Shown here: piece by piece, positions 1 through 13,853 of the stretch
Layout: every line of letters starts with the position of its first letter
Position numbering within the stretch: the first letter of the stretch is position 1
Assembly (NCBI RefSeq): GCF_000150275.1
Contig: NW_002061062.1
Location: 1-13,853 of the forward strand
Source: Trichoplax adhaerens
Taxonomy: Eukaryota > Animalia > Placozoa
DNA length: 13,853 nt
Direction of reading: 5' to 3'
Notes under the pieces: generated by a model
Databases searched by the model: none
Seen by the model: only the letters and a program-made list of their open reading frames with translations
What the model was told of the DNA's origin: nothing
Made by a program: the position numbers and the translations under genes

Positions 1-864
1 AGGAATATGACTATGCGTATACCAAGGCATTAAATCAAGGTCATTGCTATCATAATTTAATATGAGGCATGTTTATTGGCCCTCCCAATGTGGGTAAATC
101 TTCTGTTAGAAAAGTATTTATTCAACAAGTATTAATCATTAATCAATCTCCTACACAAGTGGTTGAGAATTCTGATTTCATGGTGGAGACTGAATAGTAT
201 GGTATTCATAATTGAAAGAGTTGTGACTGGACTGAGGTAGTAGACGATAAAGTCAAAACAAGCATCGATAGTCAAGAGAATATCAATCAGTAAATTACCC
301 GTGTGCATCCAATACATCGACCCGTTTTAACAGATAACCTACCATTGCCAAATTTACAAAAAAGACAATGTGCAATCTCCTATAGTTGGTAATGCTACAA
401 AAGAAGTAGCCATACCATTGAAAGAGATTGAAATCAAATCAGCGTCTAAACTCGCCTTAACTCAATATTACTGTTCGTCTATCATCGATCAAAGAACCAA
501 TAAACGTAATAATAATCAATATGTTAAAATATGGAATTTCGGTGGTCATGCCATCTATCATGTTAATCATTCTCCATTGATCTCTGCTAATAGTATTTAT
601 ATTGTAGTCTTTAATATGAATCAAGACATTAATGACAAGGTATGAACAAGACAGAACGAATCACTGAACATGACTTATTTACAAGCTATGCAAGAATGGC
701 TTACGCCGACCATAGGTAGCCATAGAAGGCAAAGTACAATAAATGTAAACTTTAATAGCGAAGATGAACAGTATTCATTACTTATTATTATTTCTAGTAG
801 CTTCTTATAGCGATTGTATTACAAAACAAGAAGATTGAAAAACTCCATTTAATCAATTTGTATC
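1..864 (+). pseudogene. Decayed, 3'-truncated ROC (Roco GTPase) exon, paralogous to 12009-12750
   Basis: Frame 3 reads EYDYAYTKALNQGHCYHNLI*GMFIGPPNVGKSSVRK, a P-loop GxxxxGKS colinear with KYYNAYSKALKHGHCFNHLIRGMFIGPRNVGKTSVRK near 12023-12133. After a frameshift it reads YVKIWNFGGHAIYH..NSIYIVVFN..YLQAMQEWL. Lesions: in-frame stops at 63-65, 195-197, 213-215 and 643-645, frameshifts, and G3 Asp changed to Asn. Homology ends at about 864, before COR. Confidence 0.92.
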
Positions 865-868
865 GGGT

Positions 869-1899: not shown

Positions 1900-2331
1900 A
1901 TGGCTGATGATGAATCTGTCTGTTCTACGAGTATGCTTCCTCACCATACCCGTATACAATCACTGTACGAAAAGGGTAACTCATTCAAGACTGCCTTCCA
2001 GTTGGTGGACGGACTATCTTGTTATACACAAGCTGTCGATGAGATTGCTTCGTTGTCGAATCCTAGTGCGGATATTGATCGACTTGCATGCGATATTTAT
2101 CTTGGTCTTTGTGATATTTACACTTTACAATTTAAATTCATGAAAGCTGTTGAATGGAGTAAAAAGGGACAAACTGTGGCTACTAAACTGCAAGATGAAG
2201 TGAGCATGGCTCAATGCTTACTAAGAGAAAGCGAGATTAAGAGATACCAAGAGGATTACAACGGAGCACTGCAAGACGGTAAGAAATCGTTGGAAATGAA
2301 ATTAAAATGGTTAAACGAAAAGGATGCTCGT

Positions 2332-3308
2332 CTTGCCGATAGTTATCATCAAATTGGGCGACTCTACTGGGACTTGTGCAAGTACGATCAGGCTCTAGAT
2401 ATGCATAACAAGTCACTACAAATTGGATTGTCAGTTCTTGGTCACAATCATCCCCATGTTGCAAAGTCATATCACAACATAGGAGTTGTCTATCATGACC
2501 AAGGCAAGTACGATCAGGCTCTGGATATGTATGACAAGTCACTGCAAATTGGATTGTCAGTCCTAGGTCACAATCATCCCGATGTTGCGTGGTCATACAA
2601 TAACATAGGAGTTGTCTATAGAAGCTAAGGCAAGTACGATCAGGCTCTGGATATGTATTACAAGTCACTGCAAATTGGATTGTCCGTCCTTGGTCACAAT
2701 CATCCCGATGCTGCGCGGTCATATGGTAGCATAGGAGTTGTCTATTTTGACTTGGGCAAGTACGATCTGGCTCTGAATATGTATGACAAGTCACTGCAAA
2801 TTGGATTGTCAGTCCTTGGTCACAATCATCCCCATGTTGCGAAGTCATATCACAACATAGGACTTGTCTATCATCGCCAAGGCAAGTACGATCAGGCTCT
2901 GGATATGTATGAGAAGTCAATTGGATTGTCAGTCCTTGGTCACAATCATCCCGATGTTGCGCGGTCATATAACAGCATAGGAGTTGTCTATCGTCACCAA
3001 GGCAAGTACGATCAGGCTGTGGATATGTATGGCAAGTCACTGCAAATTCGATTGCAAGTCCATGGCCACAATCATCCCGATGTTGCGTGGCCATATAACA
3101 ACATAGGAGTTGTCTATCATCACCAAGGCAAGTACGATCAGGCTGCGGATATGTATGACAAGTCACTGCAAATTCGATTGTCAGTCCTTGGTCATAATCA
3201 TCCCCATGTTGCCAACTCATATAACAACATAGGAGCTGTCTAAGTGTCTATCATCACCAAGGCAAGTACGATCAGGCTATGGATAACTTTAACAAGTCAC
3301 TCGATATC
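2332..3308 (+). repeat. Coding tandem array, 8 x 126-bp TPR units (copy A)
   Basis: Units start at 2332, 2458, 2584, 2710, 2836, 2956, 3082 and 3208. Consensus VAxSYxxIGxVYxxQGKYDQALDMYDKSLQIxLSVLGHNHPx. Confidence 0.97.
3236..3251. mobile_element. Probable hAT-type transposon excision footprint (CTGTCTAA GTGTCTAT)
   Basis: Relative to the repeat consensus, the 8-mer CTGTCTAT is duplicated and the two inner bases are replaced by their complements (T>A, C>G). The 8-mer fits the nTnnnnAn target preference of hobo/Hermes-type hAT elements. Confidence 0.65.
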
Positions 3309-3861
3309 GCAACCTTAAGCGGAAATGATCGCCTAGTTACAAGGACCAAAAAGAATATCGAAATCACTCTCCAGAAGCAGAAATCGTCGACATCAATAGA
3401 TGTCTATGAGCACCAAGGCAAGTACGATCAGGCTGTGAATATGCATGAGGATTATAAATAAATGTGCATGTTTTCATTGTAATGATTTTATAGTGTGTCA
3501 CTAAAAAAAAAAAAATATTTGATAAGATGATATCTTATGGAGTAATTTATATCGCTTAATTTATTTTGTTAAGTGAAGGGATGTTATGTATGTAAGAATA
3601 CAGTAACCTGTTGTACTGCACCTAACGTGTTAGCATAAGTTAAGGTATAATACATTATCACGGCTATACTATTTAAATGCAGTAAATCCTAAATAAAAGA
3701 GACTTTTAGTAAGCTTACTAGGAGGAGTGTATCAAAGTCTCTCGTGCTTACGTTAACGACTAAGAGTGGAAACACAACGGATAACAGCTGCTTTAATATA
3801 AGAAAAGTGAATGGCTGAACATGTTGTTGTTATTAATGTTCTTCTATTACTTTTGAGCCAG

Positions 3862-4182: not shown

Positions 4183-5138
4183 CCAAAGCTGGCTATCCAA
4201 AGGTATCGAATAACTGTCAAGTTAATCAAGATCATGATTTAACCTTGCCTGAAGTACCTGGATTAAAATTTCATCTTCCAGCTCAGTGTATAACAACCGA
4301 AGCCGCCCTAACCATGACTGTATACTATGCAGATCCACCTTATAATCAAGGTTTACCAATTCCGAAAGATGCTGATGGTAAACACTTTATCCAGTTATCG
4401 CCAATCGTTTGCCTCGAGCCTGATGGGTATCAATTTACCCCTAATAGCACAAGGAAAGCTTTACTTCAAGTCCCCGTTCCATATATCAACCAGATAGTTA
4501 CACTTAAGAAAAATAACAACTTTAATACCCCAATAAAAATCATTTGTCGAAGCTATGGAGGTGTGAAGTGGGAACAGCAAGATGTAGAGTATGAATATAG
4601 CCGCGATAAAAATGGATATTATTGCCTTACTTTTGCAGTAAGCCATTTCTCTGACTATGTCGTCTATTCCTACGTCAAATCTACCATTTATTCAATCCGC
4701 AAGTATATCTTTCCATCTCACCAGCAACAAATTAAAACGTTAGCTTTCCTATCCGAAATAGACACAAGTGATGATACCGTCCATATGAAATTAATCTTAT
4801 CTAAAAAAGATGAAGATGAAACTGCTATCGTGTCAGCATTCGATCAGACATTTATTAGGATACGTTTAGCTACGACTGGACTTGAAAATACTATTCTAGA
4901 TAATGGTCTATACTTCGCTATATTTGAGAAACGAGGTTTAGATTATCCTGAAGGTTATTTAAAGCCAAAGAAAGTTACTATCAATTAGAATGAGTTTAGC
5001 TATCATGCTATCCATTACTTTTGCAAGGTTATCGATAAAGCAGCTATTGATATAGCTCAAATCTTTCTACAGCCTCAAGACCAGAAGCAAGACACCAATG
5101 AAAAGGCTTGCTACTTGAGGAGAGTAAATTCCAACGAG
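4183..5138 (+). pseudogene. Exon encoding a ZU5 domain plus UPA-like region, with one in-frame TAG
   Basis: ZU5 hallmarks: PGLKFHLPAQC, LSPIVCLEPDGYQF (4395-4436), LLQVP, and FAVSHFS (HFS at 4644-4652). The frame continues past TAG 4986-4988 (NEFSYHAIHYFCKV...NSNE) to a phase-0 donor GAG|GTAAAT at 5139. The candidate acceptor CAG at 4180-4182 is less certain. Confidence 0.75.
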
Positions 5139-5852: not shown

Positions 5853-6109
5853 ATCCTGGAAACTATTTTCACTCGATCGCTAGTTGTGTTGGTGTAGACT
5901 GGATAAAATTAGCAACAGTCCTAGATCCAACGATTGATACTGAGGTTATCGAAGCAAAACATCGTGGCCATACCTATAACAGTGCTATCCAATTGCTTCA
6001 TCAGTGGTACAGAAGGAAATACCCAGAAGCTACCCTTATTCTATTGCGAAACGCTTTGGAAACGATTAACAGAAATGATATTATTATCCCAAACGAACAA
6101 AATTCCTAG
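5853..6109 (+). CDS. Terminal exon encoding a death domain
   Basis: After acceptor ccttatag (5852) it reads DPGNYFHSIASCVGVDWIKLATVLDPTIDTEVIEAKHRGHTYNSAIQLLHQWYRRKYPEATLILLRNALETINRNDIIIPNEQNS* (TAG 6107-6109). This matches the DD pattern WxxLAxxL...LLxxW...ATxxxLxxALxxIxRxDI. Not in the ORF track. Confidence 0.88.
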
Positions 6110-8950: not shown

Positions 8951-9809
8951 CACATAGGGACTACTTACGAATAAAAGCGTGTCATAGCCGCAGGTTTAAC
9001 TGGGATTTCTAGCAAGCAAGCTTCATGGTTACCAATAGTGCCCTTCCTCGTGCAGGACTTTGCAAGGAGTTTTTATAGTTAGGAAATAACCAATGAGTTA
9101 GTAGTCTGTAATCGCTGATACACTGTAGTATTTAGATGTGCTGATCAGTGCGTGTATTTAGTGTATATGCAGTTGGATAGAGCTGTTTAGCCGAGTAGAG
9201 TTTTATGTCACCTGTCGTTCTCTTTTTATCCATTAGCTCCTGTTGCAATAAGCAGCGCGCAGTCGGATTGGTAGGATTAAATCTACGTAACAGCAAAATC
9301 ATCAAGTTGTTATTAGCCGATTNNNNNNNNNNNNNNNNNNNNNNNNNNNNNNNNNNNNNNNNNNNNNNNNNNTCTATTAGAATAAAAAGATTGTTGTTTG
9401 ATGGTTATTATGATTATGAGTATAATCTATTTGTAAGCTGGAGTGCATTTTGTTAATGTACACGTAAGCACACGATTGTCCGATAGCGTTGTCTTCAGTA
9501 ATTATCTACAGAGATTGATTGAATGATTTTCGGATAATCTTCCATGCGGAATAGATAGGCAATATTGTAGAAGTTGATTTATTGATGCTTGAAAATTGTG
9601 TATAATGGAATAATTGATGTTGTTCTGTTGAACTACGACTGGCACGCAAGTACAACTATTCCGACATAACCTCATTAATACGCAGAGATAATATCGATCC
9701 GATGATTAGCAATTAATGGTTGCAACGAAGCTTGATTTGAATCTTATTTGTCTCTAACCTGTCGTTCAAGTCTTTAACTAACATATTTTTGAATTGAGTG
9801 CAGGAAAAG
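8951..9809 (+). repeat. Upstream (promoter/5'UTR) block of TPR-Roco gene copy B; duplicate of 869-1899
   Basis: Colinear with 869-1899. Shared CCAAT (1037-1041 / 9090-9094) and ACTAAC plus AG before the ATG. Confidence 0.95.
9323..9372. other. Assembly gap (50 N)
   Basis: Run of N; its flanks correspond to 1245 and 1420 of copy A. Confidence 0.99.
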
Positions 9810-11928
9810 ATGGCTGATGATGAATCTGTCTGTTCTACGAGTGTGCTTCCTCACCATACCCGTATACAATCACTGTACGAAAAGGGCATCTCATGCAAGA
9901 CTGCCTTCCAGTTGGTGGACGGACTATCTTGTTATACACAAGCTGTCGATGCGATTGCTTCGTTGTCGAATCCTAGTGCGGATATTGATCGACTTGCATG
10001 TGATATTTATCTTGGTCTTTGTGACATTTACACTTTACAATATCAATTCAAGGAAGCTGTTGAATGGAGTGATAAGGGACAAACTGTGGCTACTAAACTG
10101 CAAGATGAAGTGAGCATGGCTCAATGTTTACAAAGAGAAAGCGAGATTAAGAGACGCCAAGGGGATTTCAACGGAGCACTGGAAGACGGTAAGAAATCGT
10201 TGGAAATGAAATTAAAATGGTTAGACGAAAAGGATGCTCGTCTTGCCGATAGTTATCATCAAATTGGGTGCGTCTACTGGGACTTGTGCAAGTACGAACA
10301 GGCTGTGGATATGCATAACAAGTCACTGCAAATTGGATTGTCAGTTCTTGGTCACAATCATCCCCATGTTGCGAAGTCATATAACAACATAGGAATTGTC
10401 TATCATGACCAAGCCAAGATCGATCAGGCTATGGATATGTATGATAAGTCGCTGCAAATTGGATTGTCAGTCCTAGGTCATAATCATCCCGATGTTGCGT
10501 GGTCATACAATAACATAGGAGTTGTCTATGATCGCTTGTGCAAGTACGATCAGGCTGTGGATATGTATGACAAGTCGCTGCAAATTCGATTGGCAGTTCT
10601 TGGTCACAATCATCCTGATGTTGCCAATTCATATAACAACATAGGAGTTATCTATCGTCACCAAGGCAAGTACGATCAGGCTGTGGATATGTTGCACAAG
10701 TCACTGCAAATTGGATTGGCAGTCCTTGGTCACAATCATCCCCATGTTGCCAACTCATATTACAACATAGGACTTGTTTATCATGACCAAGGCAAGTACG
10801 ATCAGGCTGTGGATATGTATGACAAGTCACTACAAATTGGATTGTCAGTCCTTGGTCACAATCATCCTGATGTTGTGAAGTCATATAAAAACATAGGCAA
10901 TGTCTATAAAAGCCAACGCAAGTACGATCAGGCTGTGGATATGTATGACAAATCACTGCAAATTGGATTGGCAGTCCATGGTCACAATCATCCTGATGTT
11001 GCCAGCTCATATAACAAAATAGGCAATGTCTATAAAAGCCAAGGCAAGTACGATCAGGCTGTGGATATGTATGACAAATCACTGCAAATTGGATTGGCTG
11101 TCCTTGGTCATAATCATCCTGATGTTGCCAACTCATATAACAACATAGGACTTGTCTATGATGACCAAGGCAAGTACGATCAGGCTGTGGATATTTATGA
11201 CAAATCTCTGCAAATTCGATTGTCAGTTCTTGGTCACAATCATCCTGATGTTGCCAACTCATATAACAACATAGGCAATGTCTATAAAAGCCAAGGCAAG
11301 TACGATCAGGCTGTGGATATGTATCACAAGTCACTGCAAATTGGATTGGCTGTCCTTGGTTATAATCATCCTGATGTTGCCAACTCATATAACGACATAG
11401 GAGTTGTCTATCGTCACCATGGCAAGTACGATCAGGCTGTGGATATGTATGACAAATCACTGCAAATTCGATTGTCAGTCCTTGGTCATAATCATCCTGA
11501 TGTTGCCAACTCATATAACAACATAGGCAATGTCTATAAAAGCCAAGGCAAGTACGATCAGGCTGTGGATATGTATGACAAATCACTGCAAATTCGATTG
11601 TCAGTCCTTGGTCACAATCATCCCCACGTTGCGAAGTCATATAACAACATAGGACTTGTCTATCGTCGCCAAGGCAAGTACGATCAGGCTGTGGATAACT
11701 TTAAGAAGTCACTGTATATCGCAACCTTAAGCGGAAATGATCGCCTAGTTAAATGGACCAAAAAGAATATCGATATCACTCTCCGGAAGCCGAAATCGTC
11801 GACATCAACAGCGAGAAATTGGATCAAAAGTACCGTTGAACGGTTTCAACCGAATCAAATCAACAACGTTACAGCGCCAGCAAATACTATTGACGGCAGT
11901 CATAACAATCAACACGTACAAGAGAAAG
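9810..11928 (+). CDS. TPR-ROC-COR (Roco family) protein, coding exon 1: N-terminal degenerate TPRs, 12 x 42-aa TPR units, capping helix and linker
   Basis: Open frame from ATG 9810 (706 codons) ending at donor AAG|GTAATT 11929. The ORF track's tail (11929-12053) is intron read-through. Confidence 0.93.
10242..11720 (+). repeat. Coding tandem array, 12 x 126-bp TPR units (copy B)
   Basis: Exact 126-bp period from 10242 to the last unit starting at 11628. Consensus VAxSYxxIGxVYxxQGKYDQAVDMYDKSLQIxLxVLGHNHPx. Confidence 0.98.
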
Positions 11929-12008
11929 GTAATTGGAGTTTTAATACAGTAGTAGACGAGAGAGCGATGGATAACCGTAACCCTATTCTGTATTTTGTTG
12001 TTCTACAG
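11929..12008 (+). other. 80-nt phase-1 GT-AG intron joining the TPR exon to the ROC-COR exon
   Basis: GTAATT...tattttgttgttctacAG; splicing gives in-frame ...HVQEK-A-LQEKKYYNAY... Confidence 0.88.
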
Positions 12009-13853
12009 CTTTGCAAGAAAAGAAATATTACAATGCATATAGCAAAGCATTAAAACATGGTCATTGCTTTAATCATTTAATACGAGGCATGTTCATTGGT
12101 CCTCGCAATGTGGGCAAAACTTCTGTTCGAAAAATATTTACCAAGCAACCACTAGACAATCCATCTCCGACACAAGTGGCTGAGAATTTGGATATTATGG
12201 TAGAGACCGAATATTATAATATTCGTAACTTAGAGGGTTGTGATTGGACTGAAATACTAGACGATAAAGTCAAGACAGTCATACAACAGTTAGCCCAAAC
12301 AAGTATCAATAGTCAAGATAACATCAGTCAGCAAGTAACCGACATAGATCCAATAGAAAATCAAAATGCAGACAAAGACGAAAACAATCAGTATGTTAAA
12401 ATATGGGATTTCGCAGGTCATGCCGTCTATCATCTTACTCATTATCCCTTTATCTCCGTCAATAGTATTTATATTTTAGTATTTAATATTAATCAAGACA
12501 TTAACGACAAGGTAACAACAAGGAACAACCAATTACTCAAAACGACGTATTTACAAGCTATGCAAGAATGGCTTACATCAATCATAGCTGGCCATAGAAG
12601 CCAAAGTACCATCAATGTCAACATTAAAAGTGAAGATGAACAGCATTTACCACCTTCACAGCATTCATTACCTATTATTATTTTAGTAGCTTCTCATGGC
12701 GATTGTATTATCAATGAAGAAAATGGACGTACTCGATTCAATCAATTTGTGTCTACATTGACGTCTCGCATGCCTTCTTATGCCAATCATATCTATTCTT
12801 CTGGTATTATTTTTAATTGCAATCCTCTTGATAGTACTCCGTCGACACTAGAGCAGCGTCGACAATGTTGTCTTCGTTTACATGGTATCATTAAGGCATT
12901 TGTACAATCGCTGCCATTTATTACGAATCCTATACCTATTCGATGGTATATCATGGCTAGAATATTAAATAAATCGCTCCCTACTAACAGTAACAATCAA
13001 CCCGCATCTTCTATTATCAATCAAATTAGACATTCTCAAGTGCATAATATTATGACAATGCAACAAATAGTAAACTTGTCTCAACAATACGGATTATATG
13101 AAAACCATGATGAATTAATCGCTATGCTAATGTATCTACACGATTTAGGAGAAGTCATCTACTGTGATAAAGTAGGCGACGACGGAATTATTATAACTAA
13201 TGTCGATTGGTTATTAAATATATTTCGTTCTATTATTCAATTACAAGATTTTGTACAAGGAGGTGCACAGATAAAACGTGACTATGAGATAGCAAGCCAA
13301 AGAGGAAAATTATCAAGATCATACATTGATCATGCTATTTATAAATTTAATTTAGATGACAATAGTAAGCAAACTATATTGGCACTCATGCATGCTTATG
13401 ATATTCTATGTTCAATTACAAATGAGAAGAACGACAACGGCGAAGAATGTCAATACTTTGTTCCATATTTGTTACGATATGATGTTAAGCCATTTGATTT
13501 ATCAAAATATCATCAATCAGATTGGCTCTACATCGGATACGAGCATACAGATATTCCATATCTTCCAGATGGAATTTATTATTGCTTGTTATCTTCATGT
13601 TTAAAGGAATGGAATAATACGGACGTAGAATTATACTATCAATGTGCCAAATATTATTTAGCAAATGACAATCATTATCTTGTAGTCAAGAAAGAGGAAT
13701 CTCATATTGGTTTACAATATTGCTATCAGAAAATAAATGAGCCCGAGAGGAGTCAATCGATTATCGATAAAGTTACAAATTCTATATTTGTCAAACGGCC
13801 AGACGAAATTGTCAAGAATAAACTCATCTCTACTGTCAATGATAGGATGGTAA
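12009..13853 (+). CDS. TPR-ROC-COR protein, coding exon 2: ROC GTPase plus COR domain (open to window end)
   Basis: 614 stop-free codons from 12011. ROC motifs: G1 GPRNVGKT (12098-12121), G2 SPTQV, G3 WDFAGH (12404-12421), SIYILVFN, QEWLTSI, G4 ILVASHGD (about 12680-12703). COR motifs: IPIRW (12932), LHDLGEVIY (13136), DWLLNIFRSII, YFVPYLL (13454), LPDGIY (13562). Possible donor ATG|GTAA at 13850. Confidence 0.93.

What the first reader, a model, noticed from the sequence alone, without database searches (positions are those of the whole stretch)
9810..13853. Hidden intact TPR-ROC-COR gene: a hypervariable repeat sensor spliced to a Roco GTPase switch
Seen: an 80-nt intron joins the TPR ORF in frame to an unlisted 614-codon exon carrying ROC G1-G4 and COR motifs, giving at least 1321 aa. 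Known: ROC-COR is the dimerising GTPase switch of LRRK2, DAPK1 and MFHAS1, which usually carry LRR, ANK or kinase partners. TPR-Roco proteins are rare and lineage-restricted. Inference: a near-perfect tandem repeat array attached to an NTPase switch mirrors the design of fungal NLRs and brown-algal LRR-Roco proteins, suggesting a non-self receptor that uses a Roco switch instead of NACHT/NB-ARC.
Basis: partly seen in the sequence, partly recalled or inferred. Interest (0 to 1): 0.85.

Follow-up and report, generated by a model that had tools for sequence, protein, structure and literature searches.

The report
Truncated placozoan TPR-Roco GTPase gene
This is a real Trichoplax gene, cut off by the end of its contig, from an already published family that joins a fast-varying TPR repeat array to a Roc-COR GTPase switch; an immune-sensor role is plausible but untested.

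Summary
ATG 9810 opens a 706-codon TPR exon. An 80-nt GT..AG phase-1 intron (11929-12008) joins it in frame to an exon that stays open to the contig end (13853). That exon passes Pfam's cut-offs for Roc and COR-A. Its AF2 model aligns over about 600 columns to the LRRK1, LRRK2 and Chlorobium Roc-COR structures.

The genome is Trichoplax adhaerens (placozoan). It holds at least 45 Roc-COR loci, and at least 10 show the order TPR cap, Roc-COR, Death domain. Splice sites are invariant in six paralogues. A true RNA-seq run holds exactly the predicted junction, but on contigs I cannot assign to this copy.

"Hypervariable" is partly supported. The repeat scaffold is near-invariant, and excess non-synonymous change sits at TPR positions 2, 5, 9, 12 and 13, the concave ligand-binding face. 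Four gene-specific units lengthened the array to 12 units, against 5-7 in close paralogues.

"Intact" cannot be shown, because the contig ends inside the gene.

The architecture is not new. Civiero et al. 2014 catalogued Trichoplax ROCO genes with TPR, CARD and death domains. This scan has also followed up several other windows of this genome holding the same family. The NLR-like receptor reading remains inference.

I did not submit a joined spliced protein to any tool; all searches were exon by exon.

The parts
9810..10235 (+). Start codon and N-terminal cap of about 140 aa with degenerate TPRs
   Evidence: First ATG after an in-frame TGA. Residues 1-160 hit TPR_12 at 37 bits. Paralogues match from residue 1 at 89-95% identity.
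10236..11747 (+). Array of 12 TPR units of 126 nt (42 aa). The first and last are degenerate. Four 'NVYKSQ' units start at 10866, 10992, 11244 and 11496.
   Evidence: TRF, Pfam, register listing, unit identity matrix, per-codon substitution counts.
11748..11928 (+). Ser/Thr/Asn-rich linker at the end of exon 1
   Evidence: No Pfam domain. Conserved at 69-81% in paralogues just before the same intron.
11929..12008 (+). 80-nt GT..AG intron, phase 1
   Evidence: Sequence. GT and AG are invariant in 6 paralogues, with intron length 80 nt in the four close copies and somewhat longer in the two distant ones. RNA-seq run X14 has a joint 11926->12007 (cut +2, i.e. 11928^12009), and a 1374-nt contig starts at the acceptor preceded by the last bases of exon 1.
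12009..12910 (+). Roc GTPase domain (about exon-2 residues 18-300). G1 at 12098-12124, G3 at 12407-12418, G4 at 12692-12703. Disordered loops at residues 46-63 and 101-122.
   Evidence: Pfam Roc 43.2 bits, phmmer to LRRK2 Roc, AF2 model, Foldseek.
12923..13474 (+). COR-A
   Evidence: Pfam COR-A 43.4 bits at residues 335-488. Foldseek alignment to LRRK1, LRRK2 and CtRoco Roc-COR.
13475..13853 (+). COR-B-like alpha/beta part, with the frame still open at the contig end
   Evidence: AF2 pLDDT about 90. Foldseek alignments of 590-647 columns span the whole exon. Contigs of X1 and X2 run on past 13851 with letters that encode the same continuation as paralogue C1375.

Best explanation
Window 9810-13853 holds the first two exons of one member of the Trichoplax adhaerens family of kinase-less Roco proteins. 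Their layout is TPR array, Roc, COR, Cys4 motif, Death domain.

Shown here:
- The two exons join through a conserved phase-1 intron.
- The second exon has the Roc-COR fold.
- The TPR array has an almost invariant scaffold.
- Amino-acid replacements concentrate on helix-A positions of the concave, ligand-binding face.
- The array grew by copy-specific unit duplication.

Inferred:
- The TPR superhelix binds a protein or peptide ligand.
- Binding is coupled to the nucleotide state and dimerisation of Roc-COR, as in other Roco proteins.
- The C-terminal Death domain recruits death-fold partners for cell-death or inflammatory-type signalling. That domain is present in close paralogues and lies beyond the contig end here.

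This is a DAPK1-like and NLR-analogous design. I rate a surveillance role (microbe, danger or allorecognition) at about 35%. A generic regulated cell-death or scaffolding role makes up most of the rest.
For: Gene structure and motifs.

Domains and fold:
- Pfam TPR_12, Roc and COR-A are all above their cut-offs.
- AF2 model has pLDDT 80 and pTM 0.83.
- Foldseek E-values: LRRK1 8e05 1e-15, LRRK2 8fo9 9e-14, CtRoco 6hlu 4e-12, RocCOR 3dpu 6e-12, each over about 600 columns.

Family:
- Homologues are named Trichoplax adhaerens or Trichoplax sp. H2, with TPR+Roc+COR (P0001, P0026) or Roc/COR+Death (P0008, P0011, P0019).
- 99 Roc-COR matches in the window's own genome resolve to at least 45 loci, many in clusters and many with stop codons.
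- At least 10 loci show colinear TPR cap, Roc-COR and Death (for six fetched loci).

Splicing:
- Splice sites are invariant in 6 paralogues.
- The spliced junction is seen in a true RNA-seq run, and depth drops in the intron (3.9 against 44).

Repeat variation:
- Overall dN/dS is 0.52-0.74, but it is 2-3.3 at unit positions 5, 8, 12, 15 and 16.
- Position 5 has p = 1e-4 and position 15 has p = 6e-5, so both survive a correction for 42 tests.
- These equal TPR positions 2, 5, 9, 12 and 13 by the Pfam register. Those are the published concave-face ligand positions (PMC1261162).
- Unit number differs: 12 here against 5-7 in close paralogues.
- Four units are 91-96% alike and specific to this gene.
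Against: - The contig ends inside the gene, so the Cys4 motif, the Death domain and the stop codon are not seen for this copy.
- The junction evidence cannot be tied to this copy. The long RNA contig lying at the junction differs at 45 of about 1200 sites and carries 166 extra letters at 12356/7, as the paralogues do. It comes from another strain or species (organism B).
- The other runs laid are probably DNA, because their contigs cross both splice sites unspliced.
- No run holds more than 55% of the stretch's sampled words.
- All four runs show only the non-reference letter at some listed sites (e.g. 12434, 12534, 12597), and two or three of them do at most of the others.
- There is no experimental evidence on GTP binding, dimerisation, ligand or physiology.
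- My substitution counts use parsimony on a tree of recombining repeat units.
- The G3 motif is DFAGH where the family consensus is DFGGQ. Catalytic competence is therefore unknown.
Confidence: 0.65

Rival explanations
1. The copy in this window is a dead, unexpressed or mis-assembled paralogue: a small gap-containing contig in a region of tandem, decaying copies. It is not a working gene.
For: - The same 13.9-kb contig holds a Roc fragment with stops at 3-865.
- It also holds a second cap+TPR copy broken by a TAA at 2626-2628 and a frameshift near 3240.
- There are runs of N near 7.9 kb and 9.3 kb.
- The best public run holds only 55% of the sampled words.
- All four runs lack the reference letter at some listed sites, and two or three do at most of the others.
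- The copy lacks a 55-aa loop segment that the paralogues have.
Against: - About 1321 codons are open without a stop or frameshift across both exons.
- Splice sites are intact.
- G1, G3 and G4 are kept.
- The missing segment lies in a loop that the model predicts to be disordered.
- X1 and X2 hold pieces that are 99-100% identical, and they continue the frame past the contig end.
Confidence: 0.15
2. The gene is functional but is not a surveillance receptor. It acts as a housekeeping regulator of cell death, trafficking or the cytoskeleton, like DAPK1 or the LRRKs. The repeat variation would then reflect unequal crossing-over and relaxed constraint, not ligand-driven diversification.
For: - Known animal Roco proteins (LRRK1/2, DAPK1, MFHAS1) are signalling regulators.
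- Civiero et al. linked the placozoan expansion to chemotaxis and phagocytosis, not to receptors.
- Kamm et al. 2019, surveying placozoan immunity genes, do not mention Roc at all.
- Overall dN/dS of the array is below 1.
Against: - A housekeeping role does not predict at least 45 loci with clusters and many pseudogenes.
- It does not predict unit-number differences between 91-93% identical paralogues.
- It does not predict dN/dS of 2-3 confined to the concave-face positions.
Confidence: 0.3
3. There are two separate genes: a TPR-only protein ending at the stop at 12051-12053, and an independent Roc-COR protein.
For: The unspliced frame gives a 751-codon ORF 9798-12053. Contigs in X1 and X2 cross both splice sites unspliced.
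Against: - GT and AG are invariant at the same phase in six paralogues, while intron length and sequence drift in the distant ones.
- The exact junction is seen in RNA, and depth dips in the intron.
- Annotated homologues carry TPR and Roc-COR in one protein (P0001, P0026).
- X1 and X2 are probably DNA.
Confidence: 0.03

Closest known systems
Trichoplax adhaerens / Trichoplax sp. H2 ROCO expansion (Civiero et al. 2014, Chem Biol, Fig. 1; e.g. TRIADDRAFT_62498, TRIADDRAFT_63591; H2 'Nephrocystin-3, partial' P0001)
   Same: Same genome lineage. Same TPR_12 array, Roc and COR-A order, and same intron position. Close paralogues are 91-93% identical in Roc-COR and end in a Cys4 motif plus a Death domain.
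   Different: - This copy has the longest array among the close paralogues compared (12 units against 5-7), through four gene-specific units.
- It lacks a 55-aa disordered loop segment in Roc.
- It has DFAGH instead of the family's DFGGQ.
- It is cut by the contig end.
- No protein of 338-1074 aa identical to its Roc-COR exon turned up.
DAPK1 (kinase, ankyrin repeats, Roc, COR, Death domain)
   Same: The order is the same: helical repeat array, then Roc-COR, then a C-terminal Death domain. This holds at the family level.
   Different: There is no kinase or calmodulin-binding region; the protein starts at the TPR cap. It has TPR instead of ankyrin repeats. It is a large, fast-turning-over family rather than a single conserved gene. 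I did not test the sequence relationship to DAPK1 Roc-COR, because no solved structure was among the hits.
LRRK1, LRRK2 and Chlorobium tepidum Roco (solved Roc-COR structures)
   Same: The Roc, COR-A and COR-B fold aligns over about 600 columns at E 1e-15 to 1e-12. The G3 region aligns to LRRK2 Roc.
   Different: Sequence identity is 11-15%. There are no LRR, kinase or WD40 domains. Long disordered insertions lie between G1 and G3.
NLR / STAND receptors, including fungal NLRs with highly conserved internal repeats, and brown-algal LRR-ROCO candidate receptors (PMC11378527)
   Same: - Tripartite logic: variable repeat sensor, NTPase switch, death-fold effector.
- Near-identical repeats with a few diversifying surface positions.
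- Repeat-number variation.
- Clustered, expanded, pseudogene-rich family.
   Different: - The switch is a small Ras-like GTPase with COR, not a NACHT or NB-ARC STAND ATPase.
- The domain order is reversed: repeats are N-terminal and the effector C-terminal.
- The whole TPR array is one exon, so there is no exon shuffling as in brown algae.
- Function is untested.

Membership tests
Roco (Roc-COR) proteins | Roc small-GTPase domain with a P-loop (G1), DxxG (G3) and an LRRK-type G4 | tested here: met
   Pfam Roc 43.2 bits against a cut-off of 27. phmmer to LRRK2 Roc at 6.5e-5. GPRNVGKTS, DFAG and SHGD read in the sequence. D133, H229 and D231 are invariant or nearly so in the family alignment.
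Roco (Roc-COR) proteins | COR domain directly after Roc in the same polypeptide | tested here: met
   Pfam COR-A 43.4 bits against a cut-off of 35.3. The AF2 model aligns over 590-647 columns to Roc-COR of LRRK1, LRRK2 and CtRoco. COR-B is supported by fold only; there is no Pfam hit.
Roco (Roc-COR) proteins | Guanine-nucleotide binding and hydrolysis, with COR-mediated dimerisation | not testable with these tools
   A homodimer prediction for residues 335-614 gave no verdict. Biochemistry is needed.
Placozoan TPR-Roc-COR-Death subfamily | N-terminal cap plus KLC-type 42-aa TPR array, a linker, and a phase-1 intron just before the Roc exon | tested here: met
   the same order and the same intron position in C1375, C1239, C1381, C1404 and C1392.
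Placozoan TPR-Roc-COR-Death subfamily | Cys4 motif and a Death-domain exon downstream of COR | tested here: inconclusive
   The contig ends at 13853. Contigs of X1 and X2 continue the frame as in C1375. A Death domain is present behind at least 10 paralogous Roc-COR loci. It is not seen for this copy.
NLR / STAND receptors | Central NACHT or NB-ARC STAND NTPase | tested here: not met
   Neither exon has a NACHT or NB-ARC hit. Genomic NB-ARC hits do not lie next to the cap-type TPR hits. This is an analogue, not a member.
DAPK1-type Roco | N-terminal Ser/Thr kinase and ankyrin repeats | tested here: not met
   The protein starts at the TPR cap, right after an in-frame stop. Pfam finds only TPR families in exon 1.
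Repeat sensors with highly conserved internal repeats (fungal-NLR type) | Near-identical tandem units, repeat-number variation, and site-specific excess of replacements on the binding surface | tested here: met
   Units are 82-96% identical. There are 12 units against 5-7 in paralogues. dN/dS is 2-3.3 at TPR positions 2, 5, 9, 12 and 13 while the scaffold is invariant. Caveat: this is a simple parsimony count on recombining units.

The most novel reading that the evidence does not exclude
The placozoan TPR-Roc-COR-Death genes form a germline-diversified intracellular receptor repertoire, analogous to NLRs but built on a Roco GTPase. Concave-face TPR residues would evolve under ligand-driven positive selection, unit duplication would create new specificities, and the Death domain would trigger cell death or inflammatory signalling on recognition of microbes, danger or foreign placozoan tissue.
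Probability: 0.3. Interest if true: 0.7.

Novelty: new member of a known kind. Interest (0 to 1): 0.3.

Why it matters
If the receptor reading were proven, animals would have a second, independently built class of repeat / NTPase / death-fold sensors beside the NLRs. Roco proteins, the LRRK2 and DAPK1 family, would gain a clear ancestral logic as ligand-gated switches.

This window adds only modestly to that question. It gives one more paralogue, truncated by the assembly. It shows clean evidence that variation in its TPR array sits on the ligand-binding face, and that the array grew by recent unit duplication. The family and its domain combinations are already in the literature, and this scan has met them repeatedly in this genome.

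Tried and rejected
- Homodimer prediction of COR (exon-2 residues 335-614, two copies) scored 0.00 with no verdict. It is not evidence either way.
I did the census from coordinates only, so the counts are lower bounds and were done by hand.
- I tested whether the same cap-type TPR is attached to NB-ARC in this genome. No NB-ARC hit lies near a cap hit, so I dropped that argument for module swapping.
- tblastn with the Death region of H2 protein P0008 missed the Death exon behind C1375:191k. The Pfam-based genome search found it.
- Pfam and the PDB sequence search gave nothing for ORF 4245-4988. Only the language-model atlas suggests ZU5/UPA.
- A search of earlier findings by place returned nothing.
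- I rejected the two-separate-genes reading, and I rejected the antisense 330-aa ORF 10648-11640 as a by-product of the repeat.
So the full-length protein was not searched or folded, and I could not look up whether an annotated model longer than 1074 aa already covers this locus.
- Read laying was given 2,164 letters.
Full report
WHAT IS THERE

The window is a whole 13,853-bp contig (C1295) of a 105.6-Mb assembly in 1,414 contigs. All named homologues come from Trichoplax adhaerens or Trichoplax sp. H2, so this is a placozoan.

Reading the sequence gives this structure:
- An in-frame TGA at 9795-9797 is followed by ATG at 9810.
- The frame stays open to 11928.
- GT at 11929-11930 and AG at 12007-12008 bound an 80-nt intron in phase 1.
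- From 12009 the frame is open for 614 full codons to the last base of the contig.
- Without splicing, the frame stops at 12051-12053.

DOMAINS

Exon 1 (706 aa):
- A cap of about 140 aa holds degenerate TPRs (TPR_12, 37 bits).
- Twelve 42-aa KLC-type units follow (TPR_12 E 2e-213; TRF 126-nt period, 11.2 copies, 86% matches, no indels).
- A 60-aa Ser/Thr/Asn-rich linker ends the exon.

Exon 2:
- It passes Pfam's curated cut-offs for Roc (43.2 against 27 bits) and COR-A (43.4 against 35.3).
- It aligns to LRRK2 Roc around the DFAG motif.
- G1 (GPRNVGKTS), G3 (DFAG) and an LRRK2-like G4 (SHGD) are present. I did not locate G2.
- An AF2 model built on 25 family sequences has pLDDT 80 and pTM 0.83.
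- Foldseek aligns about 600 of its 614 residues to LRRK1 (E 1e-15), LRRK2 (9e-14) and the Chlorobium Roc-COR structures (4e-12 and 6e-12). Roc, COR-A and a COR-B-like part are therefore all present.
- The low-confidence segments are loops at residues 46-63 and 101-122.

I did not submit a joined spliced protein to any tool.

THE INTRON

- In six paralogues the GT and AG are invariant and the phase is the same. The intron is 80 nt in the four close copies and somewhat longer, with divergent sequence, in the two distant ones. The flanking exon sequence stays conserved.
- One true RNA-seq run (X14, another strain or species, 'organism B') contains a contig with a joint that skips exactly these 80 nt with GT..AG ends (depth 8, 22 nt on the shorter side).
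- In the same run a 1,374-nt contig starts at the acceptor and is preceded by the last eight bases of exon 1. Depth in the intron is 3.9, against 44 in exon 2.
- That long contig differs from the window at 45 of about 1,200 sites. It carries 166 extra letters at 12356/7, where the paralogues have a 55-aa loop insertion.
- Splicing is therefore proven for the family, but only indirectly for this copy.
- Runs X1 and X2 cross both splice sites unspliced and look like DNA.

THE FAMILY

- The Roc-COR exon finds 99 matches in its own genome. These resolve to at least 45 loci, often clustered (C1404 at 937-971 kb, C1392, C1389, C1372, C1414 at about 12.5 Mb). Many carry stop codons.
- Six fetched loci show the same order: cap, TPR array, linker, intron, Roc-COR, a CxxC...CxxC tail, an intron of about 1.2 kb, and a Death exon.
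- I combined coordinates from the cap search, the Death-domain search. At least 10 loci have cap, Roc-COR and Death colinear within a few kb. Further loci have a Death domain in front of Roc.
- The closest H2 protein over the COR part (P0008, 95%) is COR-A plus Death.
- Contigs of X1 and X2 run past 13851 with letters that encode the same continuation as paralogue C1375. The gene goes on beyond the contig, so 'intact' cannot be judged.

IS THE REPEAT 'HYPERVARIABLE'?

I cut the arrays of this gene and four close relatives into codon-aligned 126-nt units. I then counted synonymous and non-synonymous changes by parsimony on a unit tree.
- Overall dN/dS is 0.52 for 10 units of this gene and 0.74 for 29 units.
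- About two thirds of positions are invariant or nearly so.
- Unit positions 5, 8, 12, 15 and 16 have dN over mean dS of 2-3.3. Position 5 has p = 1e-4 and position 15 has p = 6e-5, so both survive correction for 42 tests.
- By the Pfam TPR_1 register, profile position 1 equals unit position 4. These sites are therefore TPR positions 2, 5, 9, 12 and 13.
- Magliery and Regan identified exactly this set as the variable, ligand-contacting concave face (PMC1261162).
- Unit number differs among paralogues whose Roc-COR is 91-93% identical: 12 here, about 7, 7, 6 and 5 elsewhere.
- Four 'NVYKSQ' units of this gene are 91-96% identical to each other and at most 91% identical to any unit of the other arrays. 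That points to recent amplification inside this gene.
- Caveats: this is a simple parsimony count, the units recombine, and it is not a population sample.

WHAT IS KNOWN

- Civiero et al. 2014 (PMC4104024) reported at least 17 T. adhaerens ROCO genes whose ROC-COR is surrounded by CARD, death, tetratricopeptide, LRR and AAA domains.
- A 2024 paper on brown-algal ROCOs restates this and also lists a TPR-ROCO-TIR protein in Chondrus (PMC11378527).
- Kamm et al. 2019, on placozoan immunity, describe NACHT and NB-ARC proteins with TPR or WD40 repeats but do not mention Roc.
- This scan's own notes list 19 findings on the same family in other windows of this genome, with follow-ups reaching the same verdict.
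- So the architecture is known. What this window adds is one more paralogue and the mapping of repeat variation onto the binding face.

HOW IT MOST LIKELY WORKS

This part is inferred. The TPR groove binds a protein or peptide ligand. The Roc-COR module converts binding into a nucleotide- and dimerisation-dependent state change, as established for bacterial Roco and LRRK2. The Death domain, seen in paralogues, recruits death-fold partners.

The nearest single protein by layout is DAPK1 (ankyrin repeats, Roc, COR, Death) without its kinase. By logic the design resembles an NLR. It fails NLR membership, because it has no STAND NTPase.

The expansion, clustering, pseudogenes, repeat dynamics and site-specific replacements favour a surveillance role. 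Nothing tests it. I put that role at about 30-35%.

DOUBTS ABOUT THIS COPY

- The contig also carries decayed relatives: a Roc fragment with stops at 3-865, and a cap+TPR copy at 1900-3395 with a TAA at 2626-2628 and a frameshift near 3240.
- The contig has two runs of N.
- No public run holds more than 55% of the stretch's sampled words.
- All four runs laid lack the reference letter at some listed sites (e.g. 12434, 12534, 12597), and two or three of them do at most of the other listed sites.
- This may be strain or allelic variation, old Sanger consensus error, or paralogue mixing in the assembly.
- The copy also has DFAGH where the family consensus has DFGGQ.
- I give about 15% to a silent or mis-assembled copy.

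VERDICT

This is a new member of a known kind and of modest interest.

Noticed in passing
window 3-865 (+): Fragment of another Roc domain, 55-59% identical to exon-2 residues 5-248, interrupted by several stop codons. It is the decayed remnant of a neighbouring paralogue at the left contig end.
   Followed up: partly
window 1900-3461 (+): Second cap+TPR copy: cap 89% identical, about 7 units. It has a TAA at 2626-2628 where sister units have CAA, a short duplication causing a frameshift near 3236-3250, and a truncated linker at 3285-3395. No Roc-COR lies behind it, so it is a pseudogene or a TPR-only remnant.
   Followed up: partly
window 4245-4988 and 5867-6085 (+): A 247-aa ORF with no Pfam or PDB sequence hit resembles ZU5/UPA proteins in the protein atlas (score 0.96, a lead only). 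A Death-domain match (26.2 bits) lies 0.9 kb downstream. This may be a ZU5-UPA-Death gene lying between the two TPR copies.
   Followed up: partly
window 12356/12357: Paralogues, an RNA contig of organism B and a contig of X2 all carry about 165 extra nt (55 aa) here, in a Roc loop predicted to be disordered. This copy lacks the segment.
   Followed up: partly
window 11690-13853: At some listed sites (e.g. 12434, 12534, 12597) all four public runs show only a non-reference letter. At most of the other listed sites two or three of the four do. Contigs are broken into pieces of about 100-250 nt. This could be strain or allelic polymorphism, reference errors, or an unassembled near-identical copy.
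   Followed up: no
own genome, e.g. C1410:8210347-8210781, C1384:247415-247834, C1406:881075-881500: The same cap-type TPR (about 40% identity) sits inside single open frames of 1300-1700 aa elsewhere in the genome. None is near an NB-ARC hit. I did not determine what NTPase or other domain they carry.
   Followed up: no
window 10648-11640 (-): A 330-aa antisense ORF lies inside the TPR array. It is most likely a by-product of the periodic, stop-poor repeat and not a gene.
   Followed up: no
window about 7.9 kb and about 9.3 kb: Runs of N (assembly gaps) lie upstream of the gene, so the promoter region is incompletely known.
   Followed up: no
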